IMG/VR virus record: IMGVR_UViG_3300021057_000274 | Coordinates: 62,001 to 126,000 of that record | Direction: 5' to 3' (one strand) | Length of the DNA: 64,000 bases | In this document: piece by piece, positions 12,680-28,108 of the stretch | Position numbering within the stretch: position 1 is the first letter of the stretch | How the letters are laid out: every line of letters starts with the position of its first letter | Translations under genes and position numbers: made by a program | Notes under the pieces: generated by a model | Database searches by the model: none | What the model saw: only the letters and a program-made list of their open reading frames with translations | What the model was told of the DNA's origin: nothing

Positions 12680-12687
12680 CGAAAGCT

Positions 12688-12715
12688 TTCGGGGAGGCTC
12701 GCGAGCCTCCCCGAA
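12688..12715. terminator. GC-rich hairpin, probable terminator
   Basis: 13-bp perfect inverted repeat after vWA stop. Confidence 0.55.
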
Positions 12716-12757
12716 GCCCGCGGTTTACCTCTCGCGTCTCTCATGATATAATTTCTC

Positions 12758-13708: not shown

Positions 13709-13800
13709 GGTGAGCGGAGACATCAACCAGACCTAACTTTCCTATCTCCCAGCGGCGGCCAGGTTAAATAAGAGGGCCAACTAAAGCTCGGAGATGTGAA

Positions 13801-15635: not shown

Positions 15636-16138
15636 AGCTTAAGACTGTCTTGACCGAAGCCCCGAAGTGGACAAAGCACCCGACTCGCAAGGGGGTACTG
15701 ACTCGCACGATCTCACCTGAAGAGCGGAAGCGTGAGGAGGAAAAGGAATCTGCTCCCAAGAAGAGCGCGAGCAACGAGCAGAAGTGGCTCCAACCGATTC
15801 CTGAGCTGGACGTCTCGGAGATCAAGAAGGCGTGCAAGAACGGAGGTAATGACATCGGCGCCGAGATCGAGGAGGCCACGCGAGGGCAATCCTTCGTCAA
15901 GGAGGTCACGTACGATCCTGAGCACATCGGGGTCCCTGAAGCGAAGCGGAAGTATAAGTTCAAGAGTGACAGCGACATGCCGAAGCGCAAGGTCGCAGCC
16001 GTCAAGTATGACCTCTTCGTCTACTACGACGCGAAGGAAGCTGGGATCGAGACCGACGCCGATCACGTCGAAGAGATGGTGAAGATCATCATCTATCGTG
16101 ATCCGATTAACCCGAAGCGCTTGATCGGAACGTACTAA
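15632..16138 (+). CDS. hypothetical, putative virion internal protein
   Basis: MKLKTVLTE start. Confidence 0.75.
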   Translation: MKLKTVLTEAPKWTKHPTRKGVLTRTISPEERKREEEKESAPKKSASNEQKWLQPIPELDVSEIKKACKNGGNDIGAEIEEATRGQSFVKEVTYDPEHIGVPEAKRKYKFKSDSDMPKRKVAAVKYDLFVYYDAKEAGIETDADHVEEMVKIIIYRDPINPKRLIGTY

Positions 16139-16139
16139 G

Positions 16140-16697
16140 TTGAAGTTCAAAGCTTTTCTCGCTGAGTCGGTCACCTTCGGCGCGACGATCCATCGCGTAG
16201 AGAAGGACGGGCAGCGCTCGCATGACTTCACTCCGTTCGAGAAGGAGAAGGAGATCGACTGTCGTGAGTGCCACTACCACGGCAAGTCCGAGCACTGCTG
16301 GATGTGCAAGGGAACGGGAAAGGAGAAGGTTTGGGTGACCGACTACGACAAGATTCAGCTCTCAAACTCGGGCGCGCTCGCCTTCTTGAGCGCGATCGGT
16401 GAGAAGGTCAACGGCGACGAGAGCTTAGTCGGCGGGTGGGATAACTCGGAGCTCCCTGAGCTCCGACGGAGGCTCATTCGGATGAAGAACGGCGACCTAA
16501 AGCACCATGAGACGCCACCGAGCGATGAGCAGCGCGTCCGCGGGGTCAAGCATGACGGAAACGTAGCGACGATCGAGCGCGGCCCTCGCATGATCAGTTA
16601 CGGACGAACCGCCGCACAGTACGGCGAGCTGATCGACGACTTGCTCAAGCTCATCGACTTCGCTCAGAAGCACGACGCAGGAGTGAGCTGGGCATGA
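16140..16697 (+). CDS. hypothetical with CxxC..CxxCxGxG zinc finger
   Basis: MKFKAFLAE start; CREC..CWMCKGTG. Confidence 0.75.
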   Translation: MKFKAFLAESVTFGATIHRVEKDGQRSHDFTPFEKEKEIDCRECHYHGKSEHCWMCKGTGKEKVWVTDYDKIQLSNSGALAFLSAIGEKVNGDESLVGGWDNSELPELRRRLIRMKNGDLKHHETPPSDEQRVRGVKHDGNVATIERGPRMISYGRTAAQYGELIDDLLKLIDFAQKHDAGVSWA

Positions 16698-17263
16698 AGA
16701 TCATCGAGCTCGTCGAGGGCGAGGTCATCAACATCGAGGACAAGCTTACCAAGAAGGTCAGGTCAGAATTTCGTGACAAGCTCAGCAAGATTGCCGACGA
16801 CTTGCCTCGCGCTTTCAAGCAGCAAAAGGACCAGGAGAACTGGCTCTCAGACGAGCTCAAGCGAATCAAGGAGATTCCGAACAAGGAGTTCGGAAAGGCC
16901 GAGCTCATGAAGGTGCGTCCGCTCTTCAAAGATCGCGTCGGTGGCTTCCAGATCACCGACGCGATCGTCAGCAACATGCATCGCCTCGAGTGGATCAGAG
17001 ACGGCGAGGAGTACGATAACTCGGCGACCGGCGAGACCAAGGAAGAGTTTGAGCTCGCCAAGAGGTACTTCAGTGAGAACCACGAGAAGCTCATTCAAGT
17101 TCTTCAGAAGCAGATCGACGAGCTGCGAAAGCTCGCCGAGGAAGCTCGCAAGCTGAAGTGGTACGCGCCGTGGGAGCGCTACTCGATGTACGGGTACGAC
17201 CTTCATCAGTACAAGCGTGACCTGGAGTCCCTCAAGCAGTTCAAGAAAGCGTTAAAGCTCTAA
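16694..17263 (+). CDS. hypothetical, putative virion internal protein
   Basis: MKIIELVE start. Confidence 0.75.
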   Translation: MKIIELVEGEVINIEDKLTKKVRSEFRDKLSKIADDLPRAFKQQKDQENWLSDELKRIKEIPNKEFGKAELMKVRPLFKDRVGGFQITDAIVSNMHRLEWIRDGEEYDNSATGETKEEFELAKRYFSENHEKLIQVLQKQIDELRKLAEEARKLKWYAPWERYSMYGYDLHQYKRDLESLKQFKKALKL

Positions 17264-17325
17264 ATTTCATTTACTTTTGAGTGATTTTGAGTTAAAATGC
17301 CTCTATTGCTACTTCGGAGGCGAAC

Positions 17326-17805
17326 GTGGCGCAAGTCTTTGACCTGAATGAGCTTCTTCACGAGGACGCGCTGCCTTGTAGCTTCGCGTATCTCGACATC
17401 GACGAGCTTCAGATGACGGTCGGGGACTTCTTCTCACGCAACTACGCTCGCGACCTGGTCAACTTCACCCCGATCGACTACCCGGGCTCGCAGCACAAGC
17501 GCGTGCTTCAAGCGTTTCTCCTGCGTCAGCCGATTCCCCGTTTCATCCTCGCCAACAATGACTCTAGCGGCGCCCTGAAGATTCTCAAGGGCCACGCGAT
17601 CATCGAGGCGATGGAGTACGTCTATCGCAATTACAAGAGCACCGACAGAGCGCTCGCCCGCCGTGTCCTGACCTCGATGATCACCTTCACGATCGTTCGT
17701 CGACACAGCGAAGCTCACAAACCCTTCGGTCGATTCGGTATCGACAACGAGACGCTCTACCTGAACTTCCTCAAGTTTCTCGACGCGTGCAACGAGTCGC
17801 GCTGA
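17326..17805 (+). CDS. hypothetical, weak DUF262/ParB-like
   Basis: LL..PIP.F.L segment; GGAGG RBS; early promoter upstream. Confidence 0.5.
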   Translation: MAQVFDLNELLHEDALPCSFAYLDIDELQMTVGDFFSRNYARDLVNFTPIDYPGSQHKRVLQAFLLRQPIPRFILANNDSSGALKILKGHAIIEAMEYVYRNYKSTDRALARRVLTSMITFTIVRRHSEAHKPFGRFGIDNETLYLNFLKFLDACNESR

Positions 17806-17987
17806 GTCTCGTCGCTCTCTGCCTCACAGGATGCGCCTCGGTCTGCCCTGAAGACACCCAGCGCCACGTCATCGCGAAGACGGTCGGCGGGCTCACCCAG
17901 TACTCGGTACCTTATGTCAGCCGAATGCCGGTACCGGTCTACGCGGAAATTCCAGTCACCGTCAGCGTCTGCCGCCCGGTCGAGTAG
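17787..17987 (+). CDS. small putative lipoprotein
   Basis: Hydrophobic N-terminus with LTGC lipobox. Confidence 0.55.
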   Translation: MQRVALSLVALCLTGCASVCPEDTQRHVIAKTVGGLTQYSVPYVSRMPVPVYAEIPVTVSVCRPVE

Positions 17988-18049
17988 TTCACAAGAACTA
18001 ACGGCAGTGTTTACAAGCTACTAGATTCCGATTACAATTACTCCAAGTT

Positions 18050-18422
18050 GCACGGAGGTCCGCAAGGCTCAAGTCGGACTAGGCAGGCCCCACAAGGGTC
18101 GAACAGCAGTTCGAGCCTCCCACGCAACCCAGTTACGAAGGTTCTCCGGGTGGACTCCGGGGAAGAGATCGCAGTATAACGCCAGACCCTGTCGGTTAAG
18201 AGCCAGGGACCAACCGGTGAGACCGTGGACGCCGAGAGGCAGAGGTCAAGTCCGGGAACCCCGCAGGGCGGACTGGGTATAGCGGCCGATCGTAACGCTC
18301 TGTGGAATTCGTTTTGGATCCGCGGCTGGTGCAGTACGCAGTTCGCCACTACGCGCTGAGGTACCGAGGTGAAGAGGCTCCAGATAGACGGCCGTCTAGC
18401 TGGAGCGGATAGGGTCCAAAAC
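18050..18422 (+). ncRNA. unassigned ~370-nt structured RNA
   Basis: TTTACA-N17-TACAAT promoter; multiple nested stems, GNRA loops; no credible ORF. Confidence 0.55.
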
Positions 18423-18532
18423 AAATTGCACAAAGTTGTTTACAAGCGAGGGAGACTGTGATACCATCGCTCTTCGAGTTGCACATGATTAACCTTTTCG
18501 GAAAATTGAGCACCGGTATAAATACCAGCACA

Positions 18533-18655
18533 ATGAGAACCTCCTTTACAAAACCAGCGCAAATTAGGACCGCCGCCGGCGAGCATCGAGAGACGATGCA
18601 GCCGTGCGTCAATCCTGATACGCGCTCCTCGATCGGAGGCGGAAGCTCAAACTAA
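18533..18655 (+). CDS. 40-aa putative leader peptide
   Basis: Follows TATAAATA 18517; overlaps antiterminator arm. Confidence 0.5.
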   Translation: MRTSFTKPAQIRTAAGEHRETMQPCVNPDTRSSIGGGSSN

Positions 18656-18718
18656 CGAGATCTTCCGCTAAGGCAGCACCCGGTCGAGGGGTCCAGAGAT
18701 GGACCCCTCATTCGTTTT
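18625..18718 (+). promoter_or_regulatory. attenuator (antiterminator/terminator pair) upstream of main tRNA array
   Basis: 18625-36 pairs 12 bp with 18680-91, which overlaps terminator stem 18686-94/18701-09 plus U-rich tail. Confidence 0.65.
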
Positions 18719-18748
18719 GGAGTCAAGCGGTTGAAGTTGTAGCACGAT

Positions 18749-18824
18749 GCGCCTGTAGCTCAGTGGAGAGAGTGCCGCGCTACGAACGCGGAGGTCGGGG
18801 GTTCGATCCCCTCCAGGCGTGCCA
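18749..18824 (+). tRNA. tRNA-Arg(ACG)
   Basis: Cloverleaf, CCA. Confidence 0.95.
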
Positions 18825-19028
18825 GAGGTTAAGTCGATGACCTCGATGTAACACCTAGAAGTCGACAACGCCGGTGAATCAGGGCGTGGGGAACCAAGTA
18901 CTGGTTGGATGCTGAAATGAAGCCGCGGTTTTACCCTTAAGCGCGGTGGATGACTGAGAAAGGGCGCTGTAGCCGGTCTAGCATGGGTGTCGAAGTCGAC
19001 TCCCCCTCGATCGGAGCGGTGACAAGAT

Positions 19029-19100
19029 ACGCCCGCCGATGGATTTTCGGCGCCAGGTCTTCTAAACCAGGATAGGAGGGTTCGATTCCTTCCGGGCGTG
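19029..19100 (+). tRNA. tRNA-Arg(UCU), no genomic CCA
   Basis: Loop CTTCTAA; A-A mismatch in anticodon stem. Confidence 0.75.
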
Positions 19101-19103
19101 CCT

Positions 19104-19177
19104 TCCCACATAGCTCAATGGTAGAGCCGCTGGTTGTGAACCAGATTGCCCGGGTCCGATTCCCGGTGTGGGACCCA
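19104..19177 (+). tRNA. tRNA-His(GUG)
   Basis: Loop TTGTGAA, C73, CCA. Confidence 0.9.
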
Positions 19178-19193
19178 GTAGTTGCAGTTCAAT

Positions 19194-19286
19194 TCCTCGG
19201 TACTCTAACGGTAAGAGACCTGGCTGTTAACCAGACGTATCCCGCCACCGAGCGGTATGGAGGTTCGAGTCCTCCCTGAGGAGCCA
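19194..19286 (+). tRNA. tRNA-Asn(GUU) with long variable region
   Basis: Loop CTGTTAA, G73, ~23-nt variable region. Confidence 0.85.
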
Positions 19287-19289
19287 AAT

Positions 19290-19364
19290 GGGTGCGTAGC
19301 TCAGTGGTAGAGCGGGAACCTGTTAAGTTCCGGGTCGAAGGTTTGATTCCTTCCGTGCCCTCCA
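19290..19364 (+). tRNA. tRNA-Asn(GUU)
   Basis: Loop CTGTTAA, CCA. Confidence 0.85.
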
Positions 19365-19375
19365 CAATTCAGTAA

Positions 19376-19441
19376 CCGGGAAGTCCTAGTGACGTATTGC
19401 CGCGGCTGCCATCGTTGGCACGTAGGCTAGGACTTCCCGGT
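19376..19441. repeat. 15-bp perfect inverted repeat hairpin
   Basis: accgggaagtcctag/ctaggacttcccggt. Confidence 0.8.
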
Positions 19442-19455
19442 AGAAGTACAACATT

Positions 19456-19530
19456 GGCTCATTGATGAATGGGTTATCATACTACCCTGTCACGGTAGGT
19501 TAGCGGGTTCGAGTCCCGCATGGGTCGCCA
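19456..19530 (+). tRNA. tRNA-Asp(GUC)
   Basis: Loop CTGTCAC, G73, CCA. Confidence 0.95.
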
Positions 19531-19534
19531 AAAT

Positions 19535-19615
19535 GCGCTTCGGGAGGTTGAATCTCAACAGGTCGGGTCGCTCCCGTCTGTAAAACATGGGTTAAATTCC
19601 TGTGGAAGCGCGCCA
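19535..19615 (+). ncRNA. tRNA-like RNA with non-canonical core
   Basis: gcgcttc/gaagcgc-G-CCA, degenerate T arm, no normal anticodon arm. Confidence 0.55.
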
Positions 19616-19660
19616 AAATTAGAGGCTGACGATTCTGGGCGGCAATCTAGAGTCGGCGGT

Positions 19661-19767
19661 TTGTCGTTGAGGGTGGCTCCTCAGGACCCCGAGTAGGACG
19701 GTGAGATCTTGCCGGATCGAGCCGTTTGAAACGGGTCCTGTCGGTGGTTCGATTCCACCACGACTTC
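19661..19767 (+). ncRNA. tRNA-like RNA with expanded anticodon arm
   Basis: gtcgt/acgac, D-like hairpin, ggaccc/gggtcc enclosing ~45 nt, canonical T arm. Confidence 0.5.
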
Positions 19768-19954
19768 ACTCTAACCCTCTTCATGAAGCTGTGGGTAGAT
19801 CACCCTGCCACAAATCGGGTGATGAGGTCCGATCGCCTTCGTCCGTGGCATGCATGGCGCCAGGGCGATACCCCAGCAGTAACTGCGGCCGTCACCGAAC
19901 TTTATGCGAGAAAGTTCAGCGGTGACGAGGAGGAGGCGAACTGCTCGTTCAGTT

Positions 19955-20029
19955 GTCCCATTCGTCTAGTGGCTAGGACACAACCCTTTCAAGGTTGAGA
20001 ACGGGGATCGAAACCCCGATGGGACACCA
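19955..20029 (+). tRNA. tRNA-Glu(UUC)
   Basis: Loop CTTTCAA, CCA. Confidence 0.95.
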
Positions 20030-20033
20030 CTAT

Positions 20034-20109
20034 CTGGGTGTAGGTCAGCGGCGAGACTGCCTGGTCCGGAGCCAGGAGGCCGTGGGTTCGAGTCCCACCA
20101 CCCAGACCA
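20034..20109 (+). tRNA. tRNA-Pro(CGG), C33
   Basis: C1-G72, A73; loop TCCGGAG. Confidence 0.9.
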
Positions 20110-20149
20110 AAGCGGCCCCCAGCGCCGCTCTAAGCCGAGGCTGGGGCAT

Positions 20150-20225
20150 CGGAGAGTCGCCTAGCGGCTATGGCGCCTGCTTTGGGAGCAGGATACCGTG
20201 GGTTCGAGTCCCACCTTTCCGACCA
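20150..20225 (+). tRNA. tRNA-Pro(UGG)
   Basis: Loop TTTGGGA, CCA. Confidence 0.95.
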
Positions 20226-20235
20226 ACACATCAAT

Positions 20236-20310
20236 CGCTTCTTGGCGGCAAGCTGCCGTGCTCCCACTAGAAGGGAGAGCGAGGAGGTTCACGCCCTCCA
20301 GGAGCGACCA
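20236..20310 (+). tRNA. atypical tRNA, UAG anticodon (Leu-like) without long arm
   Basis: Full cloverleaf plus CCA; loop ACTAGAA; D loop lacks GG; T loop TTCACGC. Confidence 0.55.
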
Positions 20311-20311
20311 C

Positions 20312-20385
20312 GGGTCCGTAGTTCAATGGTAGAATGTTACCTCGACACGGTAGAGACGAAGGTTCGATTCCTTCTGGACCCACCA
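20312..20385 (+). tRNA. tRNA-Val(GAC), C33
   Basis: Loop TCGACAC, CCA. Confidence 0.9.
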
Positions 20386-20391
20386 AAATTT

Positions 20392-20465
20392 GGGCTACAA
20401 GCTTTAAGGTGAAGCATCTGGCTCTTACCCAGAAGAACGGGGATCATTACCCCGGTAGCCCACCA
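20392..20465 (+). tRNA. tRNA-Lys(CUU)
   Basis: Loop CTCTTAC, CCA. Confidence 0.9.
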
Positions 20466-20468
20466 GCA

Positions 20469-20617
20469 TTCGGTAGTGACCTAACGTTCAGGACGAAAGG
20501 AATCGTGCGGTCGCCCTAGTACCAGCTCTGGGTGACTAAACGGAGTCGAGTAGGCCTGCTCGCAAAAGGGATCGGTCAGGGACTGGTACTCCAGAGGTTC
20601 GACTCCTCCTACCGGAC
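20469..20617 (+). ncRNA. 149-nt tRNA-like RNA with expanded D and anticodon arms
   Basis: ttcggtag/ctaccgga, agtaccag/ctggtact, GG-TTCGACT-CC T arm. Confidence 0.55.
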
Positions 20618-20625
20618 TAAACTAG

Positions 20626-20702
20626 GGTTCTTTAGCTCAGATGCGTAGAGCGCCGAGCTTACACCTCGGATGTCGGGGGTTCAAGTCCCTCAGGAACCAC
20701 CA
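20626..20702 (+). tRNA. tRNA-Val(UAC)
   Basis: Loop CTTACAC, CCA. Confidence 0.95.
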
Positions 20703-20704
20703 AT

Positions 20705-20780
20705 GGCGATGTGGTGAACTGGCTATCACGCGGCTCTCATAAGGCTGAGTAGACGGGATCGAAACCCTCCATCGCTACCA
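20705..20780 (+). tRNA. tRNA-Met or Ile2 (CAU)
   Basis: Loop CTCATAA, CCA; identity not resolvable by eye. Confidence 0.9.
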
Positions 20781-20881
20781 TTCTAGGAAGTTGGGACTGC
20801 TCAAGCGGACGGAGTCCGGTAGCCCTCGCGGGGAGACCAATGAGTTGTGGTTCGATTCAACGCCTAGCTTTTATTGCGCTT

Positions 20882-20956
20882 CCCTCATTCGTCTAATGGT
20901 CAGGGCCCGTGCTTGATAGGCGCGTGACGGTGGTTCGATTCCATCATGAGGGACCA
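20882..20956 (+). tRNA. tRNA-Ile(GAU)
   Basis: Loop TTGATAG, CCA. Confidence 0.9.
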
Positions 20957-21046
20957 ACAGCAGCCGAGAAGCAGGCCCGTCGGTCGGTTAGAGAGCCTTC
21001 CGCACGTGCGCTCCGTGAAGCCACGGCAAACGGACTGCTGCATTAT

Positions 21047-21121
21047 CAGGGTGTAGCTCAGTGGGAGAGTGCTACGTCGGGAACGTAGAGGCCGCAGGTT
21101 CAATCCCTGCCACCCTGACCA
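21047..21121 (+). tRNA. tRNA-Pro(GGG), C33
   Basis: C1-G72, A73; loop TCGGGAA. Confidence 0.9.
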
Positions 21122-21224
21122 ATAGCTGGCTTGCAAGTGACGAGAGGTCATCATGCTTCGGAGCGCACGCTGGGGATAAGCTCCCAGCGCAGCGACCTAG
21201 ACGGCAAGCTGGCGGGCCTTATTT

Positions 21225-21295
21225 CAGAGCGTAGCGTAGTGGTAGCGTACCTGGCCTGGAACCAGGAGGTGTTGGTTCGATTCCAGCCGCTCTGA
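21225..21295 (+). tRNA. tRNA-Pro(UGG), C33, no genomic CCA
   Basis: C1-G72, A73; loop CCTGGAA. Confidence 0.85.
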
Positions 21296-21297
21296 CC

Positions 21298-21385
21298 GGG
21301 GGAAGATGTAGGTTCGAATCCTATCCAATGGCCATAAGCCCGTGAGGGTGGCTGGCAGGTAGCTCAACCGGCAGAGCAGCTCCCC
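21298..21385 (+). ncRNA. circularly permuted tRNA-like RNA (T arm before D arm; YrlA-like topology)
   Basis: GTAGG-TTCGAAT-CCTAT precedes TAGCTC-AACCGGCA-GAGC; ends gggga/tcccc pair. Confidence 0.6.
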
Positions 21386-21391
21386 TTTCTG

Positions 21392-21467
21392 GTACATTAG
21401 CTCATGGGGTTAGAGCGCGCGCCCGATAAGCGCGGGGTGGAAGGTTCGAGTCCTTCATGTACCACCA
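21392..21467 (+). tRNA. tRNA-Ile(GAU), C33
   Basis: Loop CCGATAA, CCA. Confidence 0.9.
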
Positions 21468-21600
21468 GACAACACCGTTGCTTCTCACCGAGAGAAGCCA
21501 GCTAGCAAGCGAAGCAGACATTCGTCTAGATCACTGCGACTGGACCCGGAATCCCTCGCGTGGTGGCCGATTGTCGGCTAGGACGGATTCGTTGTCTACT

Positions 21601-21673
21601 GGGGGATGTAGCCGGGGCACAGGAACGCCTTGCAAGCGATCCGCGATGGGTTCAACTCCCATATCCTCCACCA
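21601..21673 (+). tRNA. tRNA-Ala(UGC), atypical D and anticodon stems
   Basis: G3-U70, loop CTTGCAA, CCA. Confidence 0.75.
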
Positions 21674-21774
21674 GATCTTTAGCTCAAACGGGTAAGAGCG
21701 GCGGGACAGATAACCCGCGTCAAGGTGAGCTACGGCGAGCCGAGTGCGGCGACCCCATGCCGTAAGATCTACCA
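21673..21774 (+). ncRNA. tRNA-like RNA with 8-nt anticodon loop and replaced T arm
   Basis: agatctt/aagatct-A-CCA, canonical D arm, gcggg-ACAGATAA-cccgc, tacggc/gccgta arm. Confidence 0.6.
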
Positions 21775-21778
21775 AACT

Positions 21779-21849
21779 GGGCTGTTAGTTTAGCGGGAAA
21801 ACACTGCGCTTGCACCGCGGAATCCGGGGTTCGACTCCCCGACGGTCCA
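21779..21849 (+). tRNA. tRNA-Ala(UGC), no genomic CCA
   Basis: G3-U70, loop CTTGCAC. Confidence 0.9.
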
Positions 21850-21863
21850 CCCACAGATAGGAG

Positions 21864-22052
21864 ATGATCATGTTACCGATCGACGAAGCTGTCAAGCTCA
21901 CCGACATGGATGAGCTGGGTCGTGAGGAGTGGGAGCGTCTCTTCATCTCGACGAACCCGATGTGGAACGTCAGCCCGACCGAGGTCATGAGCGAGGTCAG
22001 AAGGTTGGGTGAACGTCGTAAGGAGCTCCTCAAGGGAGTTCGCTGGTTCTAA
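21864..22052 (+). CDS. small hypothetical protein inside tRNA array
   Basis: AGGAG RBS, 62 aa. Confidence 0.65.
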   Translation: MIMLPIDEAVKLTDMDELGREEWERLFISTNPMWNVSPTEVMSEVRRLGERRKELLKGVRWF

Positions 22053-22057
22053 GCTGT

Positions 22058-22131
22058 TGGGGATTGGTGAAATGGTATCATGTGAGATTCTGACTCTCAA
22101 GTCGTAGGTTCGATTCCTACATCCCCTGCCA
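22058..22131 (+). tRNA. tRNA-Gln(CUG)
   Basis: Loop TTCTGAC, G73, CCA. Confidence 0.95.
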
Positions 22132-22180
22132 CACAACGTCCCTCCACGCCTCTCAACGATGCGCACCCAGGAGGGCCTCT

Positions 22181-22253
22181 GTGCCTCAGACCAATCTGGT
22201 GATGGACCGAGCCTGAAAGCCTCGGAAGCTCGGTTCGATTCCGAGGGGGCACA
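22181..22253 (+). tRNA. tRNA-Phe(GAA), no genomic CCA
   Basis: Loop CTGAAAG; C31-C39 mismatch. Confidence 0.8.
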
Positions 22254-22255
22254 CC

Positions 22256-22348
22256 GGTAGGTGGCGCTGGCGCGCGGCTGGGCCTTATAGACCCGGGAGA
22301 CTGGCCGGACTGGCTGGAACGGCGAGGGTTCGAATCCCCGACCTACCA
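22256..22348 (+). tRNA. tRNA with UAU anticodon (Ile-type) and long variable arm
   Basis: ggtaggt/acctacc-A; loop CTTATAG; ~25-nt variable region. Confidence 0.65.
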
Positions 22349-22453
22349 CCTGTAAGAATCTCCCGAGGTTTGACCCGAGGAGTCGTTAGAGAAGATGATA
22401 TCTCGCTGGCGACGGCCAGAGAACCCCGGGGATGACAGACTCCCGGGACGATT

Positions 22454-22529
22454 GGCCCTTAAGCTAATCAGGTGAAAGCGCCGGTCTGAAAAGCCGGAGA
22501 GTCTGGTTCGATACCAGAAGGGGCCACCA
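22454..22529 (+). tRNA. tRNA-Phe(GAA)
   Basis: Loop CTGAAAA, CCA. Confidence 0.95.
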
Positions 22530-22547
22530 ATACAGGAGGATCGCCAA

Positions 22548-22634
22548 ATGTTCAAAGCTTGGTGGGACAATGGGGCAACGAGAGGCTTTGGGATGCGCTT
22601 ATTCCGGAGCTGGCTTTGTGGTGATTGCTGCTAG
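22548..22634 (+). CDS. 28-aa Trp/Cys-rich peptide
   Basis: AGGAGG RBS; MFKAWWDNGATRGFGMRLFRSWLCGDCC. Confidence 0.45.
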   Translation: MFKAWWDNGATRGFGMRLFRSWLCGDCC

Positions 22635-22653
22635 AGCGATTCCGGACAGACAG

Positions 22654-22731
22654 ATGACATGGAGCTGGTACTTCTTTCTCGGATTTCGCGTACGTGGAAA
22701 GCACTTAATTGATTTTCGCTGGACGAAGTAG
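22654..22731 (+). CDS. 25-aa aromatic-rich peptide
   Basis: MTWSWYFFLGFRVRGKHLIDFRWTK; weak RBS. Confidence 0.35.
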   Translation: MTWSWYFFLGFRVRGKHLIDFRWTK

Positions 22732-22737
22732 ATCTGT

Positions 22738-22810
22738 TGGGGTGAGGATTGGCATCTACGGATGGCTTTGAACCATCTCGGACACGGTTCGATTCCGTGC
22801 GCCCCTGCCA
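22738..22810 (+). tRNA. tRNA-Gln(UUG)
   Basis: Loop CTTTGAA, G73, CCA. Confidence 0.85.
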
Positions 22811-22966
22811 AGGTTGATGGAATGATCATCGACGCCTAGAAGAGCGTGCACGCTTCCTCCAGAGCGGCTAGACGTGAGGAGGATTTTGGATGAAGGGCTA
22901 TCCTCGTTCGATTCGAGGCGTCCTGAACGAAACGGCGCCGAGTCGGTGGAAGCCCGGCGCCTGCAT

Positions 22967-23038
22967 GTCCCGTTGGATTTCCGGGTAGATCGCTGGGACT
23001 TCACCCCAGAGAGACGGGTTCAACTCCCGTACGGGACG
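22967..23038 (+). tRNA. tRNA-Glu(UUC), C33, no genomic CCA
   Basis: Loop ACTTCAC, G73. Confidence 0.85.
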
Positions 23039-23045
23039 CCCCCAC

Positions 23046-23134
23046 GGGGCGCGACGCTGAAGACACCGCCGCGGGCTCAACGCTAGGCCACCGCGGTAAG
23101 ACTTCGGGGCGGACGGTTTCCGCGCGCTCCACCA
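23046..23134 (+). ncRNA. Ala-acceptor tRNA-like RNA resembling a tmRNA TLD with no mRNA domain
   Basis: ggggcgc/gcgctcc with G3-U70, A73, CCA; stemless D region; accgc/gcggt arm. Confidence 0.55.
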
Positions 23135-23151
23135 AATGATACAATAGCTAG

Positions 23152-23907
23152 ATGCTCTACGTAGGAACCAGCGGCTTCCAGTACAAGCACTGGAACGACG
23201 GCGTGTTCTACCCGTCTGGCGTCAAGGATCGCTTGGCGTTTCTCAGCCAACGGATGAACGCTCTCGAGATCAACGCGTCGTTCTACAGCATTCCAAAACC
23301 GGGGAGCGTGCGGCGCTGGAGCGAGAAGCTTCCGCAGAACTTCAAGCTAACGCTCAAGGCTCCTCGGTCGGTCACGCACCGACGTCGCCTCAAGCTGCGG
23401 AGCGACCCGACGATCAAGCAAGGCTGGGACCTCCTCCGCTACTTCTCGGAGGGCGTTCTTCAGATCGCTCCGCAGCAGCGAGGACCTGTTCTCGTGCAGT
23501 TGGAGCACAGATTTAAGATCGATCTCGACCGCTTAGAGGCCGTGCTGGAGTTCTTCAGAGTTCTCCAGCTGACCGTTGCGCTCGAGGTAAGGTGTACCTC
23601 CTGGCTTCGGATGGAGACGCTCAGGCTGCTTCGAGAGTATCGAGGCGCGTTGGTCTCCGCGGATTGGAGGGAGTGCACGGTGCCGATCTACGACACGGGA
23701 AGCTTCGTGTACGTGCGCCGCCACGGGTCGCTCGGACGATACTTCGGGTCATACTCGAGGGCCAAGCTCCAGGCTGATCTCGACGCGGTAGCGCCGTACC
23801 TAGAGCAAGGGCGCGACGTCTACGTCTTCTTCAACAATGACGGCGGCGGCGCGGCCCCGAGGAACGCAGTAAGCATGCTTAAGTTAGCAGATGTCCGATT
23901 CGTCTAG
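23152..23907 (+). CDS. DUF72 (YecE-like) family protein
   Basis: YVGTSGFQY.HW..FYP, EINASFY, KAP..TH, FFNN. Confidence 0.9.
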   Translation: MLYVGTSGFQYKHWNDGVFYPSGVKDRLAFLSQRMNALEINASFYSIPKPGSVRRWSEKLPQNFKLTLKAPRSVTHRRRLKLRSDPTIKQGWDLLRYFSEGVLQIAPQQRGPVLVQLEHRFKIDLDRLEAVLEFFRVLQLTVALEVRCTSWLRMETLRLLREYRGALVSADWRECTVPIYDTGSFVYVRRHGSLGRYFGSYSRAKLQADLDAVAPYLEQGRDVYVFFNNDGGGAAPRNAVSMLKLADVRFV

Positions 23908-23967
23908 TGGTAAGGACGCTAGCCCCTCAAGCTGGAAACCCGGGTTCGATTCCCGGCTCGGACGCCA
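23893..23967 (+). tRNA. tRNA-Glu(CUC), C33
   Basis: Loop CCCTCAA, CCA; overlaps DUF72 stop. Confidence 0.9.
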
Positions 23968-23968
23968 C

Positions 23969-24042
23969 GCGGATTTGGTCTAATGGTATGACGTGAGATC
24001 GCCAGTCTCAAAGCGCGGGTTCGATTCCCGCAATCCGCTCCA
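23969..24042 (+). tRNA. tRNA-Gly(GCC), C33
   Basis: Loop TCGCCAG, U73, CCA. Confidence 0.9.
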
Positions 24043-24117
24043 ACGTTGGTCGCGCGCTTGACCGTTCCGCGAGATAAGAGAGGAGGTCTCTAAAATGAGA
24101 TCCGCCAACGTTTCAAT

Positions 24118-24192
24118 GGTACCCATGGTGTAATGGAAGCACTTCTCCCTGTGAAGGAGGTAGCACCGGATCGATACCGGTTGGGTACCCCA
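24118..24192 (+). tRNA. tRNA-His(GUG) with G-1
   Basis: G-1:C73, loop CTGTGAA, CCA. Confidence 0.95.
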
Positions 24193-24195
24193 TAA

Positions 24196-24270
24196 CTCGC
24201 TGTGGTGAAACGGACATCACGATCCTCTCCTAAAGGGTAAGTCCAGGTTCAATTCCTGGCAGCGAGGCCA
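24196..24270 (+). tRNA. tRNA-Arg(CCU)
   Basis: Loop CTCCTAA, CCA. Confidence 0.95.
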
Positions 24271-24271
24271 T

Positions 24272-24346
24272 CTCCGGTCCAGTGGCATTCTGGCACAGCG
24301 GCTACGAACCGCAGTTGCGGGAGTTCGATTCTCTCACCGGGGTCCA
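24272..24346 (+). tRNA. tRNA-Arg(ACG)
   Basis: Loop CTACGAA, CCA. Confidence 0.8.
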
Positions 24347-24353
24347 AACACAT

Positions 24354-24427
24354 GTCGGTGTGGTCCAATGGCAGGGCGATTGGCTGCAACCCAATAGACG
24401 GGGGTTCGATTCCCTTCACCGACTCCA
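24354..24427 (+). tRNA. tRNA-Cys(GCA)
   Basis: Loop CTGCAAC, U73, CCA. Confidence 0.95.
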
Positions 24428-24630
24428 AAGAAAAAGCGGCGCCCGATGAGTTGGGCGCCGCTGGAGGACCGGCCCTTCGCAGGGAGGGGAGGAGGGGCCG
24501 GTTGGACGAATTTCAATGTATCACTCTCTCCCGAGAAAGTAAACAGATTCTTGCAAGAAGAAAGCACTTCGACCTCAGCCTGGCCGGGCGGTCGAAAAGT
24601 TGGGGTAAGAGCCCTCATGGCTAGGCGCAG

Positions 24631-24704
24631 GCCCGGTTCGTACAGTGGTAGTACGCCTGTTTCGTAAACAGGATGCGGGGGTCCGATTCCCTCACTGGGC
24701 ACCA
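24631..24704 (+). tRNA. tRNA-Thr(CGU)
   Basis: Loop TTCGTAA, CCA. Confidence 0.95.
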
Positions 24705-24705
24705 T

Positions 24706-24780
24706 CTCGCTGTAGTGAAGTGGACATCACGGTCTCCTCCGAAGGGACAAGCCCAGGTTCGATTCCTGGCAGCGGGGCCA
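24706..24780 (+). tRNA. tRNA-Arg(CCG)
   Basis: Loop CTCCGAA, CCA; body nearly identical to Arg(CCU). Confidence 0.95.
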
Positions 24781-24798
24781 AGCTACATAAATAGCCTC

Positions 24799-25125
24799 AT
24801 GAAGCTCTCAGACCTCTTCGAGACCAAGTCCAACTTTTACGTGAAGCTGTGGGGGAAGGTGAACGACGTCCAGATCGACGGCGTCTCCGACCTCGAGGAC
24901 CTCCACGAGAAGATCGGCACAGGCGCTTCGAATCCGATCAAGAAGAAGATTGAGGCGGCGTTCGCCGAGCTGGTCAACGCTAAAGGCGACCACTACGCCG
25001 CCGAGATTCAAGAGGTGATCTGGGAGCACAATGACGAGTTCTTCGGCGTTGACCTCTACGTCAGCACTCCAGACCTTGACGGTGAAGCTCCCCGCACGGT
25101 GCGCGGCGAAGTTCACCAGTCGTGA
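24799..25125 (+). CDS. hypothetical, putative virion internal protein
   Basis: TAAATA 24788; MKLSDLFE. Confidence 0.75.
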   Translation: MKLSDLFETKSNFYVKLWGKVNDVQIDGVSDLEDLHEKIGTGASNPIKKKIEAAFAELVNAKGDHYAAEIQEVIWEHNDEFFGVDLYVSTPDLDGEAPRTVRGEVHQS

Positions 25126-25454
25126 GACTCAACGAGATCTTCTCCTACGAGGACGACGAGGAGCGTCGCATTCAAGCTCGTCGCAAGCGCGACACGTACG
25201 GTGCTCCACTACATCCCAGCAAGGCCAACACCTTCGTCGCCAAGTTGCTCGACAAGCATGACGGCAACCCGAAGGCGGCACTCGCTGAGCTCGTCGACGA
25301 GATCGACGACTACCAGCGGAGCCGCGGCAAGAACGGCCCGATGATGACGCTCTACACCGCGATGCACCAGATGCTCTTGGACTACGTCAAGAACCCAAGC
25401 GCCTTTCAGCGGTTCATGCAAAAGGTTGTCAAGACTCCGCCCGATAAACTTTGA
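25122..25454 (+). CDS. hypothetical, putative virion internal protein
   Basis: GTGA coupling; MRLNEIF. Confidence 0.7.
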   Translation: MRLNEIFSYEDDEERRIQARRKRDTYGAPLHPSKANTFVAKLLDKHDGNPKAALAELVDEIDDYQRSRGKNGPMMTLYTAMHQMLLDYVKNPSAFQRFMQKVVKTPPDKL

Positions 25455-25513
25455 CGGTGAAGCCTTCTCTTGTAAAGAAGCGGAAGTCGGTTCGAATCCG
25501 GCATCGGGCACCA
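25439..25513 (+). tRNA. tRNA-Thr(UGU)
   Basis: Loop CTTGTAA, CCA; overlaps upstream CDS end. Confidence 0.9.
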
Positions 25514-25524
25514 AACTCAACAAC

Positions 25525-25598
25525 GCTCTTGTAGTCCATTGGTAAGATGCATCCTTGGTAAGGATGAGAACAGGGTTCGATTCCCTGCTGGAGCACCA
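25525..25598 (+). tRNA. tRNA-Thr(GGU)
   Basis: Loop TTGGTAA, CCA. Confidence 0.9.
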
Positions 25599-25614
25599 CG
25601 TAGAAAGTCATCAA

Positions 25615-25854
25615 ATGAATCTCAAGGACATGGTCTCAGGCAACAAGCTCGTGCGGTTCTCCTTTTACCGTGAGGGCCAGCTCTGGTACAAGACGGAGTG
25701 CGGCTTCGAGTTTCCCGTGCCCACCGATCCCAACGAGATCGGCACCGCCGTCTTCCTCGCGGAGGACAAGGCGCTGCTCTTCATGCGGTACATCAGGAAG
25801 CACCTCGACTATCTCAACAAGGCCAAGCAAGAACAAGCTGGAGATGCCGGTTAA
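25615..25854 (+). CDS. hypothetical protein
   Basis: 79-aa ORF with phage-like codon use. Confidence 0.7.
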   Translation: MNLKDMVSGNKLVRFSFYREGQLWYKTECGFEFPVPTDPNEIGTAVFLAEDKALLFMRYIRKHLDYLNKAKQEQAGDAG

Positions 25855-25969
25855 GACCCGGCCGGGCGCGCGTGAGTTACCGCGGCACGTAGTTTAAACC
25901 TAGAACGCCAGCTACTCACTTAGGAGTCAAACATGACGCACCTCCGAAAACATCCCGCTACACCTCGAC

Positions 25970-26675
25970 GGGAGAGTGGTGTTAACGGTTGAGCACAGCG
26001 GACTTATTCATGAGCTTGATGCGCTATGTAAAATAGACGTCATGCTCATGTGTCAGCACTGCAATAGATCCACATCGCAACGTCAAGCGCTCATCATGCA
26101 TGAGCGGTCGTGTAAGCAGAATCCTAATAGAGTGCCCGGGAAGAATTCCTGGTCCAATCCAACCTACAAAATGTCGGAAGAGACTAGGCAGAAGCTTCGT
26201 GAGAGCACGATCCGAAGAAATCGAAGCATGTCTCTAGAGTGCGCAGGAAGATCTCTGAGGGGCGGATCAGGTATCTGCGTGACCATCCTGAGATGGTGCC
26301 ATACAAACTCAATCATAAATCTAAGGGTAGATCTTTCCCGGAGAGATACTGGGGAGAGCTCCTGAAGAAATACGGTCTAGAGTTCGTCGAGCAGTTTCAG
26401 GAATCTACCTACACGCTTGACTTCGCATTCCTTGATCGCAAGATCGACCTCGAGATTGACGGAGAACAACACTACGTCGATCCTAGGATTGTTTCCTCTG
26501 ATCAGCGCCGAAATGCTTTTCTTGAGGGACGAGGATGGAAGATTGTTCGAGTGCGCTGGTCTAAGTACCAGCAGCTTTCTGGAGATGATCGCGAAAAGTT
26601 CGTCACGAATCTCGTTGAAAGCCTGACGACAGGTTAATCCGACAGGTCTCGGTTCGAATCCGAGTTCTCCTACCA
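25970..26675 (+). tRNA. tRNA-Lys(UUU) split by 628-nt insert (exons 25970-26005, 26634-26675)
   Basis: Joined exons give gggagag/ttctcct-A-CCA and cgga-CTT|TTAA-tccg. Confidence 0.8.
26042..26637 (+). CDS. EDxHD/DUF559 homing endonuclease with Zn finger and NUMOD3-like repeats; one -1 frameshift near 26239
   Basis: CQHC..HERSC; SEETRQKL; ER..LDF..LEIDGEQH..DQRRN..GWK.VR. Confidence 0.8.
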
Positions 26676-26749
26676 CGTAATTGTGTGTGTTCTTTTGAGT
26701 GATTTTGAGATATAATGTCTCATATTCAACGGTCCTGGAGGCGGGAAAC

Positions 26750-27148
26750 GTGGAAAAGATCACCAAGTTCGACAAACACAATCTTCAACTCCTTCGCCAA
26801 GAGATGAACGCCGCGCTAGCCACAGTCGGGGCGAAGTACGGCATCAAGGCAAACATCGGTAACATCAAGTACAGCGAGTCGGCATTCTCTTGCCCGCTAG
26901 CGGTGATCGTTGAATCCGCGGTCGCAGATCCCCGGCTCGAGAGCGTGGCGCCAGAATCGATCATCCACCTCAAAAAGAAGTGCGGTGACAAGGCCCTCCT
27001 CAAGCAGATCACCTACAACGGCCGCAAGATGGTGGTCGTCGGACTACGCGGCAGCAATTTTCTGGTGCGTGTTGACGGTGTCGACGGCGTCCGGAAGTTC
27101 AAGGGCCGTTGCTTCAGCGAAATATACGACGCGATCCTGAACCAATAG
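26750..27148 (+). CDS. hypothetical protein
   Basis: GGAGG RBS, TATAAT promoter upstream. Confidence 0.75.
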   Translation: MEKITKFDKHNLQLLRQEMNAALATVGAKYGIKANIGNIKYSESAFSCPLAVIVESAVADPRLESVAPESIIHLKKKCGDKALLKQITYNGRKMVVVGLRGSNFLVRVDGVDGVRKFKGRCFSEIYDAILNQ

Positions 27149-27359
27149 AATCGCATAAATCGAATGATGCCTCCCGGGTAACCGGGAGCGCAAGCGGAGC
27201 TAGATGACCTGATCTAGCTTCGGCCGTCTCTGGAATTAGCGTCGAGCGTCACGTTGACGCGCGCAAGCTAAGGAGTTACTCCTGAAGCCTCGCGTGATGC
27301 CGCACGCCGGACCCAGTTGGGGCGTATCAGGTAGCTTGCATTTTTCTAGGGAGCAGATC

Positions 27360-28025: not shown

Positions 28026-28034
28026 GAAGTAACC

Positions 28035-28108
28035 GCCTCTGTACGTCAATGGCAGACCACCGCTCCCACACAGCGGGAACTCTGGTTCGATTCCAGACAG
28101 AGGCACCA
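28035..28108 (+). tRNA. tRNA-Val(CAC), C33
   Basis: Loop CCCACAC, CCA. Confidence 0.9.

What the first reader, a model, noticed from the sequence alone, without database searches (positions are those of the whole stretch)
21298..21385. Circularly permuted tRNA-like element in the array
Seen: a canonical T arm precedes a canonical D arm, the acceptor position is closed by a GNRA-capped hairpin, and the ends pair where the anticodon stem would be. Known: this is the YrlA Y-RNA topology, also seen in permuted tRNA genes. Inference: a Y-like partner for the 3663 protein or a tRNA decoy.
Basis: partly seen in the sequence, partly recalled or inferred. Interest (0 to 1): 0.62.

Follow-up and report, generated by a model that had tools for sequence, protein, structure and literature searches.

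The report
Permuted tRNA mimic in phage array
The 93-base gap between two tRNA genes of a 389-kb soil phage encodes a tRNA folded "inside out" (T arm first, D arm last, no anticodon, closed acceptor); the same design turns up in other phages, some with no Ro60 protein, so this kind of tRNA mimic probably has a job that does not need Ro60.

Summary
Window 21298-21390 fills the whole spacer between tRNA-Pro(UGG) and tRNA-Ile(GAU). It folds as a 6-bp closing helix, a canonical T arm, a GUGA-capped acceptor-like hairpin and a canonical D arm. All tRNA-elbow nucleotides are present, including an A15:U48 Levitt pair. It is not an ordinary tRNA-tRNA junction: its end pairing (-10.9 kcal/mol) is matched by 1 of 77 ordinary junctions. 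A model built only from 11 similar elements of other phages scores it 52 bits, against at most 36 for the window's ordinary junctions. The design recurs in viral contigs. Four copies lie beside Ro60 (TROVE) genes and are true phage YrlA-type RNAs. Others lie in tRNA arrays, including isolated Xanthomonas phage RTH11, where four base pairs covary. This phage (98% complete) has no Ro60. The "3663 protein" is TerD-like, not Ro-like. Ro60 was not found in 151 genomes of the only host family hinted at. Best reading: a YrlA-type tRNA-core mimic, cut out by tRNA processing and acting without Ro60. Its partner is unknown. No expression data or close relatives exist. A rearrangement by-product is not excluded.

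The parts
21225..21297 (+). Upstream tRNA-Pro(UGG). It ends in ACC and is followed directly by the first G of the element. It is one of the few tRNAs of this phage without a fully encoded CCA.
   Evidence: ARAGORN; Rfam tRNA 64.9 bits; 3' ends of all 48 tRNAs listed.
21298..21303 (+). 5' strand of the closing helix (GGGGGA). It occupies the position of the 3' strand of a tRNA anticodon stem.
   Evidence: MFE and centroid fold. Duplex energy with the 3' strand is -10.9 kcal/mol, matched by 1 of 77 ordinary junctions.
21304..21307 (+). Linker AGAU in the position of the variable loop. It holds G46 and U48, the Levitt partner of A15.
   Evidence: Sequence. U at this position in 12 of 13 permuted elements against 29 of 68 ordinary junctions.
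21308..21324 (+). Canonical T arm: 5-bp stem and loop UUCGAAU.
   Evidence: Aligned to the T arm of the YrlA model and of models R1 and R3.
21325..21359 (+). Acceptor-position hairpin. Two C-G pairs at its base, an irregular stem, and a GCCC/GGGU helix capped by GUGA at 21342-21345. CCA at 21332-21334 follows the 7-nt acceptor-like strand.
   Evidence: The block 21329-21341 matches the element of L031 at 12 of 13 positions (alignment A3).
21360..21377 (+). UA (positions 8 and 9) plus a canonical D arm: GCUC/GAGC stem and loop AACCGGCA with A14, A15, G18, G19 and A21.
21381..21386 (+). 3' strand of the closing helix (UCCCCU).
21387..21390 (+). 4-nt single-stranded tail up to the 5' end of tRNA-Ile. 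This is the presumed RNase P cut site that would make the element's 3' end.
   Evidence: The cleavage itself is an inference.
21391..21467 (+). Downstream tRNA-Ile(GAU).
   Evidence: ARAGORN; Rfam tRNA 59.2 bits.

Best explanation
The spacer encodes a circularly permuted, tRNA-derived small RNA of about 93-95 nt. It keeps the complete tRNA elbow (T arm, D arm and their tertiary contacts). It has no anticodon loop, and its acceptor end is closed by a hairpin. It is a stand-alone version of the tRNA-like module of YrlA-type Y RNAs.

Inferred steps:
1. It is transcribed with the tRNA operon.
2. It is released by the enzymes that mature its neighbours. RNase P, cutting at the 5' end of tRNA-Ile, makes its 3' end. 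3' processing of tRNA-Pro, which lacks an encoded CCA, makes its 5' end.
3. It then acts as a stable mimic of the tRNA core. It occupies or recruits a factor that recognises the tRNA elbow: a tRNA-processing or decay enzyme such as PNPase, or a tRNA-directed host defence protein.
4. It does this without Ro60.

Shown: the anatomy, the membership of a recurrent class that covaries, and the absence of Ro60 from the phage. Inferred: expression, processing and the partner.
For: Anatomy and chance:
- The anatomy and the tertiary nucleotides are intact.
- End pairing is stronger than in 76 of 77 ordinary junctions.
- The Levitt pair is co-adapted across the class.

Recurrence of the design:
- A viral-contig pattern scan returned 121 T-loop-to-D-arm matches. 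In 14 of them neither arm lies in a called tRNA. With the window's element these make 15, and 12 of the 15 have at least 4 of 5 closing pairs, against 16 of 77 ordinary junctions.
- In an alignment of 12 elements, 91% of cells are paired. The covariation score is 0.53 against 0.15 in shuffles (0 of 500 reach it) and at most 0.18 in slid controls.
- A leave-one-out model scores the window element 52.1 bits, against at most 35.6 for other junctions in the window.

Conservation in relatives of other members:
- The nearest relative, L031, scores 44.7 bits. It shares a 12-of-13 block in the hairpin and the rare D loop, and its closing helix has a different sequence but still pairs.
- Its 97% variant L134 differs from it in about 1 kb only by a G.U to G-C change in the T stem.
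- In an independent homologous family (L049, L071, L122 and Xanthomonas phage RTH11), 4 pairs carry compensatory double changes.
- The L085 copy lies between two small open reading frames and is followed by a hairpin and a U run.

Link to YrlA, and absence of Ro60:
- Four copies lie 0.5-1.3 kb from TROVE genes.
- There is no TROVE gene in this phage, in RTH11 or in the complete record G008.
- A neighbouring spacer carries an orphan abiF antitoxin-type RNA, so this array already holds at least one probable decoy RNA.
Against: - There are no RNA data. Only DNA runs hold this sequence.
- No close relative of this phage exists, so conservation of this particular copy cannot be tested.
- The fold is no more stable than shuffled sequence.
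- The acceptor-position hairpin is irregular.
- The same array holds several degenerate tRNA-like pieces, so decay products do occur here.
- Complementary ends, the Levitt pair and the CCA could all be inherited from tandem copies of one tRNA, without selection.
- The covariance models also give 50-68 bits to ordinary junctions that share the same loop sequences. The class is therefore defined by 'not part of whole tRNAs', not by score alone.
Confidence: 0.57

Rival explanations
1. A non-functional by-product of tRNA gene rearrangement. A unit-length piece of a tandem tRNA repeat, or two half-deleted neighbours, is kept only because it is young. It is transcribed passively and degraded.
For: - The array contains other degenerate tRNA-like pieces and orphan T loops.
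- CCA after the acceptor-like strand, complementary ends and the Levitt pair are what a piece of a tandem tRNA pair would inherit.
- The fold z-score is -0.14.
- There is no expression or conservation evidence for this copy.
Against: - If both halves came from one tRNA, the acceptor pairing has decayed to 4 of 7 while 34 nt of T and D arms and all tertiary positions are untouched.
- If the halves came from two different tRNAs, the end pairing (1 of 77) and the two exact breakpoints must be coincidence.
- A GNRA-capped helix has been built at the acceptor position.
- Homologous or analogous elements are kept, with compensatory changes, in unrelated phages.
Confidence: 0.22
2. A classical YrlA Y RNA that binds a Ro60 (Rsr) protein supplied by the host, and tethers it to PNPase.
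For: - It has the same module order as YrlA (PMC4201824).
- Sibling elements lie beside phage Ro60 genes.
- In the 437-kb record G006 the element sits in the tRNA array, 170 kb from that phage's TROVE gene, so action in trans is conceivable.
Against: - The phage has no TROVE gene.
- TROVE was not found in 151 sampled genomes of the family whose DUF72 genes are closest to the phage's copy. That host hint is weak.
- There is no room for a long 5'/3' stem, because the element is flush with both tRNAs.
- The 5' motif reads GGGGAAG, not GNCGAAG.
- The YrlA score is 17.9 against a gathering score of 69.
Confidence: 0.07
3. A structural spacer. It folds on itself to insulate the neighbouring tRNAs from misfolding, or to present them to RNase P and the 3'-processing enzymes, and has no function after release.
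For: - Nearly every 60-130-nt spacer of this array folds with its two ends paired. Some are far more stable than shuffles: z = -6.3, -4.1 and -3.0.
- The element is exactly spacer-sized and abuts both tRNAs.
Against: - Insulation needs only a hairpin. It does not explain an intact tRNA elbow, the Levitt pair, or the recurrence of the same design outside tRNA arrays, followed by a hairpin and U run (L085).
- This spacer is among the least stable of those tested.
Confidence: 0.08
4. A true permuted tRNA gene. The ends are joined in the anticodon loop, for example by one of the phage's three Rnl2-type ligases, and the hairpin is opened at the CCA. The product is a working or two-piece tRNA.
For: - The 3' half precedes the 5' half and the ends pair at the anticodon-stem position.
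- CCA follows the acceptor-like strand, as it does in L031, L055, L085 and L129.
- In tRNA register, exactly 7 nt (CCUUUCU) would form the loop, and the phage has no tRNA-Lys(UUU).
- The phage has three RNA-ligase-family genes and a CCA-adding enzyme.
- M. smegmatis YrlA is cut by RNase P and receives CCA (PMC4201824).
Against: - Only 4 of 7 acceptor pairs can form, two of them G.U, and there is no discriminator base.
- The would-be loop has C33 and C37 instead of U33 and a purine at 37.
- No tRNA model matches any circular reading.
- To my knowledge, no bacterial or phage pathway for permuted tRNAs is known.
Confidence: 0.04

Closest known systems
YrlA-type bacterial and phage Y RNAs (Rfam RF02553; Chen et al. 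2014, PMC4201824)
   Same: The module order is T arm, acceptor-like stem-loop, D arm, closed by a helix. The T and D loops are near-invariant and a Levitt pair is present. It groups by structure and covariance model with phage elements that lie beside Ro60 genes.
   Different: There is no Ro60 gene in the phage. There is no GNCGAAN0-1G motif and no long stem with an internal loop. It scores 17.9 bits against a gathering score of 69. It sits inside a tRNA array, flush with two tRNAs. It has CCA in the hairpin loop, which the Ro-adjacent copies lack.
Circularly permuted tRNA genes of the red alga Cyanidioschyzon merolae and some other algae and archaea (from my own knowledge; Soma et al. 2007)
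   Same: The 3' half is encoded upstream of the 5' half, and the ends pair where the anticodon stem lies.
   Different: Those genes keep a perfect acceptor stem and a proper anticodon loop, and mature through a circular intermediate. Here the acceptor stem is broken and capped by a GNRA hairpin, and the loop would be non-canonical.
Two-piece (circularly permuted) tmRNA of alpha-proteobacteria and cyanobacteria (Rfam RF04321; otherwise from my own knowledge)
   Same: The gene is permuted: the T arm and the acceptor 3' strand with CCA lie upstream of the acceptor 5' strand, and the loop between them is removed.
   Different: There is no tag reading frame and there are no pseudoknots. The D arm is fully canonical and the element is only 93 nt. 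ARAGORN and Rfam report no tmRNA here.
Non-tRNA stable RNAs inside phage tRNA clusters: BF23/T5 RNAX (annotated 'stable RNA with unknown functions') and T4 species 1 and 2 RNAs (from my own knowledge)
   Same: They are small structured RNAs encoded between phage tRNA genes, presumably released by tRNA processing, with unknown function.
   Different: There is no sequence or structural relationship. The 26-nt match to RNAX is only a T arm that belongs to a normally ordered tRNA-like piece.

Membership tests
YrlA (RF02553) | tRNA-like module in the order T arm, acceptor-like stem-loop, D arm | tested here: met
   The element aligns to model positions 28-81.
YrlA (RF02553) | Conserved tRNA tertiary nucleotides, including a 15:48 Levitt pair | tested here: met
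   A15:U48, U8, A14, G18, G19, G53-C61 and U54-A58 are all present.
YrlA (RF02553) | Encoded within about 4 kb of a Ro60/TROVE gene on the same strand (criterion of PMC4201824) | tested here: not met
   There is no TROVE gene in the 98%-complete 389-kb genome, either by Pfam or by a profile of five phage Ro60 proteins.
YrlA (RF02553) | GNCGAAN0-1G motif near the 5' end (Ro60 recognition) | tested here: not met
   The only similar string is GGGGAAG at 21299-21305, with G in place of the invariant C. The other array-embedded elements show no such motif.
YrlA (RF02553) | Long stem formed by the 5' and 3' ends, with a large internal loop | tested here: not met
   There is only a 6-bp helix, and the flanks are complete tRNAs.
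YrlA (RF02553) | Score at or above the Rfam gathering threshold (69 bits) | tested here: not met
   It scores 17.9 bits. However, phage copies lying beside Ro60 genes also reach only 31-51 bits, so this threshold does not separate phage members.
YrlA (RF02553) | Binds Ro60; modified by TruB and DusA | not testable with these tools
   This needs immunoprecipitation and modification mapping.
Permuted tRNA gene | 3' half upstream of the 5' half, with the ends pairing as the anticodon stem | tested here: met
Permuted tRNA gene | Intact 7-bp acceptor stem with a discriminator base and CCA | tested here: not met
   Only 4 of 7 pairs form in tRNA register, two of them G.U. CCA is present but there is no discriminator base.
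Permuted tRNA gene | Joining the ends gives a canonical 7-nt anticodon loop (U33, purine at 37) | tested here: not met
   The loop would read CCUUUCU, with C33 and C37.
Permuted tRNA gene | Circular or re-joined RNA intermediate | not testable with these tools
   No RNA runs hold this sequence.
Two-piece tmRNA | tmRNA call with a tag peptide frame and pseudoknots | tested here: not met
   ARAGORN finds no tmRNA. Rfam gives no tmRNA match at E up to 10 in 21200-21480.
tRNA (RF00005) | Cloverleaf in the normal order | tested here: not met
   No tRNA match covers the element, even at E up to 10.

The most novel reading that the evidence does not exclude
Array-embedded, Ro60-less permuted tRNA-like RNAs are a distinct and widespread class of phage RNA. 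In this reading the YrlA-type tRNA core has a function of its own. It could be an anti-defence decoy against tRNA-directed host nucleases, or a hijacker of a tRNA-processing or decay enzyme. Some members would be processed further: opened at the CCA in the hairpin loop into two-piece tRNA-like molecules, or, as appears in Xanthomonas phage RTH11, carried inside the anticodon loop of another tRNA.
Probability: 0.3. Interest if true: 0.8.

Novelty: new variant of a known kind. Interest (0 to 1): 0.6.

Why it matters
What the tRNA-like half of bacterial Y RNAs does has been open since it was described in 2014 (PMC4201824). It has always been studied together with Ro60.

Copies of the same module in phages that have no Ro60 gene, sitting inside tRNA operons, suggest that the module works on its own. 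They also offer a simple test system. Xanthomonas phage RTH11 is isolated and complete. It carries a homologous-class element that nobody has annotated.

The finding also adds to the view that phage tRNA arrays are more than codon suppliers. In this window the array carries an orphan abiF antitoxin-type RNA as well. The spacers may therefore be a store of small RNAs aimed at host systems.

Tried and rejected
- **Close relatives for conservation.** Two neighbour proteins, searched by back-translated patterns, found nothing in viral contigs. A 20-nt exact piece of the element found nothing. The 476-aa neighbour has no homologue among 5.8 billion proteins. The other contigs that carry the region are 100% identical. 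A metagenome-wide pattern found only this phage and the L031 lineage.
- **Reads.** Three soil DNA runs show no variants and no joints. There are no RNA runs.
- **Rfam YrlA as a test.** Rejected as uninformative. Ordinary adjacent tRNAs score higher than the element, and true Ro-adjacent phage copies stay below the gathering score.
- **Covariance score alone as a class definition.** Rejected. Model R2 gives 50-68 bits to ordinary junctions that share the loop sequences.
- **Recent copy of array tRNAs.** The halves match array tRNAs only in the generic T and D arm motifs.
- **Second copy in the genome.** None found. A weak look-alike at 25836-25917 is seen by R1 only.
- **BF23/T5 RNAX match.** It is only a T arm in a normally ordered tRNA-like piece.
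- **L111 and L120.** Dropped from the set because they are tandem tRNAs with inserts.
- **Neighbour genes of L031 and L085.** Terminase, portal and a homing endonuclease; no functional hint.
- **The 3663 protein as a Ro-like partner.** It is a TerD-like fold family.
- **RtcB in the phage.** None found.
- **Folding energy as evidence.** It does not support the structure.

Full report
**Setting**

The window is bases 62001-126000 of a 389,331-bp virus record that is estimated 98% complete. The record comes from soil metagenomes. It carries 48 tRNA genes, 40 of them in window 9570-28108. It also has a CCA-adding enzyme gene at 56929-58035 and three Rnl2-family ligase genes.

Its few recognisable proteins link it only distantly, at 24-31% identity, to jumbo phages such as Xanthomonas phages XacN1 and Xoo-sp13. 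The only host hint is weak. A DUF72 gene inside the array is 57% identical to genes of Oxalobacteraceae.

**The observation**

Window 21298-21390 is the entire 93-nt spacer between tRNA-Pro(UGG) at 21225-21297 and tRNA-Ile(GAU) at 21391-21467. The minimum-energy and centroid folds agree:

- a 6-bp closing helix, 21298-21303 with 21381-21386;
- a 4-nt linker;
- a T arm at 21308-21324 with loop UUCGAAU;
- an irregular hairpin at 21325-21359 that ends in a GCCC/GGGU helix with a GUGA loop;
- UA at 21360-21361;
- a D arm at 21362-21377 with loop AACCGGCA.

In tRNA numbering every nucleotide that builds the elbow is present: U8, A9, A14, A15, G18, G19, A21, G46, U48, G53, U54, U55, C56, R57, A58 and C61. 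There is no anticodon loop and no free acceptor end. CCA at 21332-21334 follows the 7-nt acceptor-like strand directly. No tRNA model matches the stretch, even at E up to 10. No ORF of 80 aa or more covers it.

**Is it more than chance?**

Folding energy gives no support: z = -0.14. Real tRNAs and several neighbouring spacers are also unremarkable by this measure.

The relevant null is the ordinary junction of two adjacent tRNAs, which always places a T arm before a D arm. I scanned the viral contig collection for a T loop followed within 25-50 nt by this type of D arm.

- In 77 matches both arms lie inside ARAGORN tRNAs. These serve as the null set.
- In 14 matches neither arm does. With the window's element this makes 15.

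Three comparisons separate the two groups:

- **Closing pairs.** Using the five positions where an anticodon stem would lie, 12 of the 15 have at least 4 of 5 pairs, against 16 of 77 in the null set.
- **End pairing.** The window element's flank duplex (-10.9 kcal/mol) is matched by 1 of 77 null junctions.
- **Levitt pair.** The base before the T stem is U, the partner of A15, in 12 of 13 elements against 29 of 68 null junctions (p = 0.0009).

The two halves are therefore adapted to each other as one folding unit.

**A recurrent class**

Two loci, L111 and L120, proved to be tandem tRNAs with inserts and were removed. One near-duplicate (L071) was also left out. Twelve elements were then aligned.

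- With the common structure, 91% of cells pair.
- The covariation score is 0.53 against 0.15 in shuffles (0 of 500 reach it) and at most 0.18 when partners are slid.
- All five closing pairs show changes on both sides.

A covariance model built without the window's element scores it 52.1 bits. Every ordinary junction in the window scores 35.6 or less.

One caution applies. The same kind of model gives 50-68 bits to ordinary junctions that share the selected loop sequences. The class is therefore defined by architecture plus 'not part of whole tRNAs', not by score alone.

**Homologous families**

The nearest relative of the window's element is L031 3522-3599, with 44.7 bits under a single-sequence model. 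It lies in a GC-rich 40-kb phage contig, 37 nt upstream of a tRNA. The two elements share the rare D loop and a 13-nt block of the hairpin at 12 of 13 positions. Their closing helices differ in sequence but both pair. A 97%-identical variant, L134, differs from L031 across about 1 kb only by a G.U to G-C change in the element's T stem.

A second family comprises L049, L071, L122 and the isolated Xanthomonas phage RTH11 (OQ790161.1 75880-75956, unannotated). It shows four pairs with compensatory double changes, two in the closing helix and two in the acceptor-position stem. This is the clearest sign that the design is under selection.

In L085, a complete 39.8-kb phage record, the element lies between two small open reading frames and is followed by a hairpin and a U run.

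**Relation to YrlA and Ro60**

The order T arm, acceptor-like stem-loop, D arm is the defining module of YrlA RNAs. These RNAs are found within about 4 kb of Ro60 genes in bacteria and 22 phages. They carry a 5' GNCGAAN0-1G motif thought to be involved in Ro60 recognition (PMC4201824). That paper already warned that tandem tRNAs mimic the model.

Four of my elements (L056, L077, L091, L114) lie 0.5-1.3 kb from TROVE genes, so they are genuine phage YrlA-type RNAs. Even so, they score only 31-51 bits on the Rfam model. Elements with no TROVE gene found in their record overlap that range: L129 at 49, RTH11 at 44, L055 at 36.5 and L031 at 34.5. Several of those records are fragments. The window's element scores 17.9.

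Ro60 genes are missing where the genomes are complete enough to judge:

- This phage has none, either by Pfam or by a profile of five phage Ro60 proteins.
- RTH11 has none.
- The complete record G008 has none.
- In the 437-kb record G006 the element sits in the tRNA array, 170 kb from that phage's TROVE gene. No element lies beside that gene.
- TROVE was not found in 151 sampled genomes of the family that holds the closest DUF72 genes.

The element therefore works like the YrlA tRNA module but fails the membership tests that concern Ro60.

**How it probably works**

The following steps are inferred, not shown. All tRNAs of the array lie on the same strand as the element. RNase P cutting at tRNA-Ile would make the element's 3' end. 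tRNA-Pro is one of the few tRNAs here without a fully encoded CCA; it ends ACC followed by G. Such an end fits release by an endonucleolytic cut after the discriminator, followed by CCA repair, and the phage encodes its own CCA-adding enzyme.

The released RNA would show a complete tRNA elbow. It would offer nothing for anticodon nucleases or aminoacyl-tRNA synthetases to act on. A decoy or tether for an elbow-binding factor is therefore the most economical function.

Two observations give some support. Phage phiLo Y-like RNAs bind host PNPase directly (PMC12135203). A spacer two tRNAs downstream, at 22140-22176, carries an abiF-motif RNA at 48 bits against a gathering score of 37, although the phage has no Abi_2 gene. 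RNAs with that motif neutralise AbiF toxins (bioRxiv 10.1101/2025.04.15.648962). The array thus already appears to carry one RNA directed at a host system.

**What remains open**

- There is no expression evidence of any kind.
- This particular copy has no close relatives.
- The array holds other degenerate tRNA-like pieces.
- Five of seven Ro-less lineages keep CCA after the acceptor-like strand, while none of the four Ro-adjacent copies do. This fits a recent origin from tandem tRNA genes, so part of the 'design' may be inherited rather than selected.

I put the functional tRNA-core mimic at 0.57 and the neutral by-product at 0.22. The other readings share the remainder.

No alternative genetic code was used. 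Read laying received 4,001 letters.

Noticed in passing
window 22140-22176 (+): An abiF RNA motif (Rfam RF03085, 48 bits against a gathering score of 37) lies between tRNA-Gln and tRNA-Phe. The whole 389-kb phage has no Abi_2/AbiF gene. This looks like an orphan antitoxin-type RNA, possibly a decoy against a host AbiF system.
   Followed up: partly
L186 1465-1617 (Xanthomonas phage RTH11, OQ790161.1 about 75849-76001): The RTH11 permuted element (L186 1496-1572) seems to lie inside the anticodon loop of an outer tRNA-like molecule. The outer parts are an acceptor strand and D arm upstream, stem CCUGU/ACAGG, and a T arm, acceptor strand and G-CCA downstream. The pairings fit by eye and in the fold, but the fold z-score is 0.25. 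The region is unannotated in GenBank.
   Followed up: partly
window 21674-21777 (+): A tRNA-sized RNA with paired ends followed by ACCA, a canonical D arm, and a 5-bp stem with an 8-nt loop. It has no canonical T arm. ARAGORN and Rfam do not call it. Fold z = -2.0.
   Followed up: no
window 9837-9899, 19365-19455, 20226-20311, 20957-21046, 21122-21224, 21468-21600, 24043-24118: Nearly every 60-130-nt spacer of the tRNA array folds with its two ends paired. Three are far more stable than shuffles (z = -4.1, -6.3 and -3.0). The spacers may encode further small structured RNAs.
   Followed up: partly
window 25836-25917 (+): A weak look-alike of the element: a 6-bp closing helix, the same AGAU linker, a T-arm-like hairpin with loop UUAAGAC, a hairpin containing CGUGAG, UA, and a degenerate D-like arm. 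It overlaps the end of ORF 25555-25854. The single-sequence model finds it (21.6 bits) but the class model does not.
   Followed up: partly
window 61181-61255 (+): A tRNA with anticodon CUA (ARAGORN labels it 'Pyl'; Rfam tRNA 65 bits). This would be an amber-suppressor type tRNA, far from the main array. I did not check whether the phage reads TAG as sense.
   Followed up: no
window 9972/9973, 21297/21298, 22255/22256: Three tRNAs (Gly-UCC, Pro-UGG, Phe-GAA) end in C or CC and are followed with no spacer by the G that starts the next structured RNA. At the first and third sites that RNA is a tRNA-like molecule in normal order. Almost all other tRNAs encode a full CCA.
   Followed up: partly
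window 19028-19100, 22256-22347, 9973-10047, 24271-24353: Sub-threshold or uncalled tRNA-like sequences. Two give weak tRNA-Sec model hits of 28 and 21 bits. One has an oversized anticodon loop. One has a poor D arm. They may be odd tRNAs or decaying copies.
   Followed up: no
window 23152-23907 (+): A DUF72 (YecE-like) gene sits inside the tRNA array. Its best matches, at 57% identity, are in Oxalobacteraceae (Keguizhuia, Noviherbaspirillum, Herminiimonas). This is the only host hint found.
   Followed up: partly
whole record G000 (389,331 bp): IMG/VR labels the record a provirus. However, assemblies from other samples give contigs of about 395.7 kb that start at different points, and one ends 12 kb from the DUF72 gene. 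That fits a circularly permuted free phage genome better than an integrated one.
   Followed up: no
L182 (G004) and L184/L114 (G011): Phage Ro60 genes are accompanied by two to three tandem YrlA-like copies on the same strand, for example L056 6998-7075 and 6836-6906.
   Followed up: no
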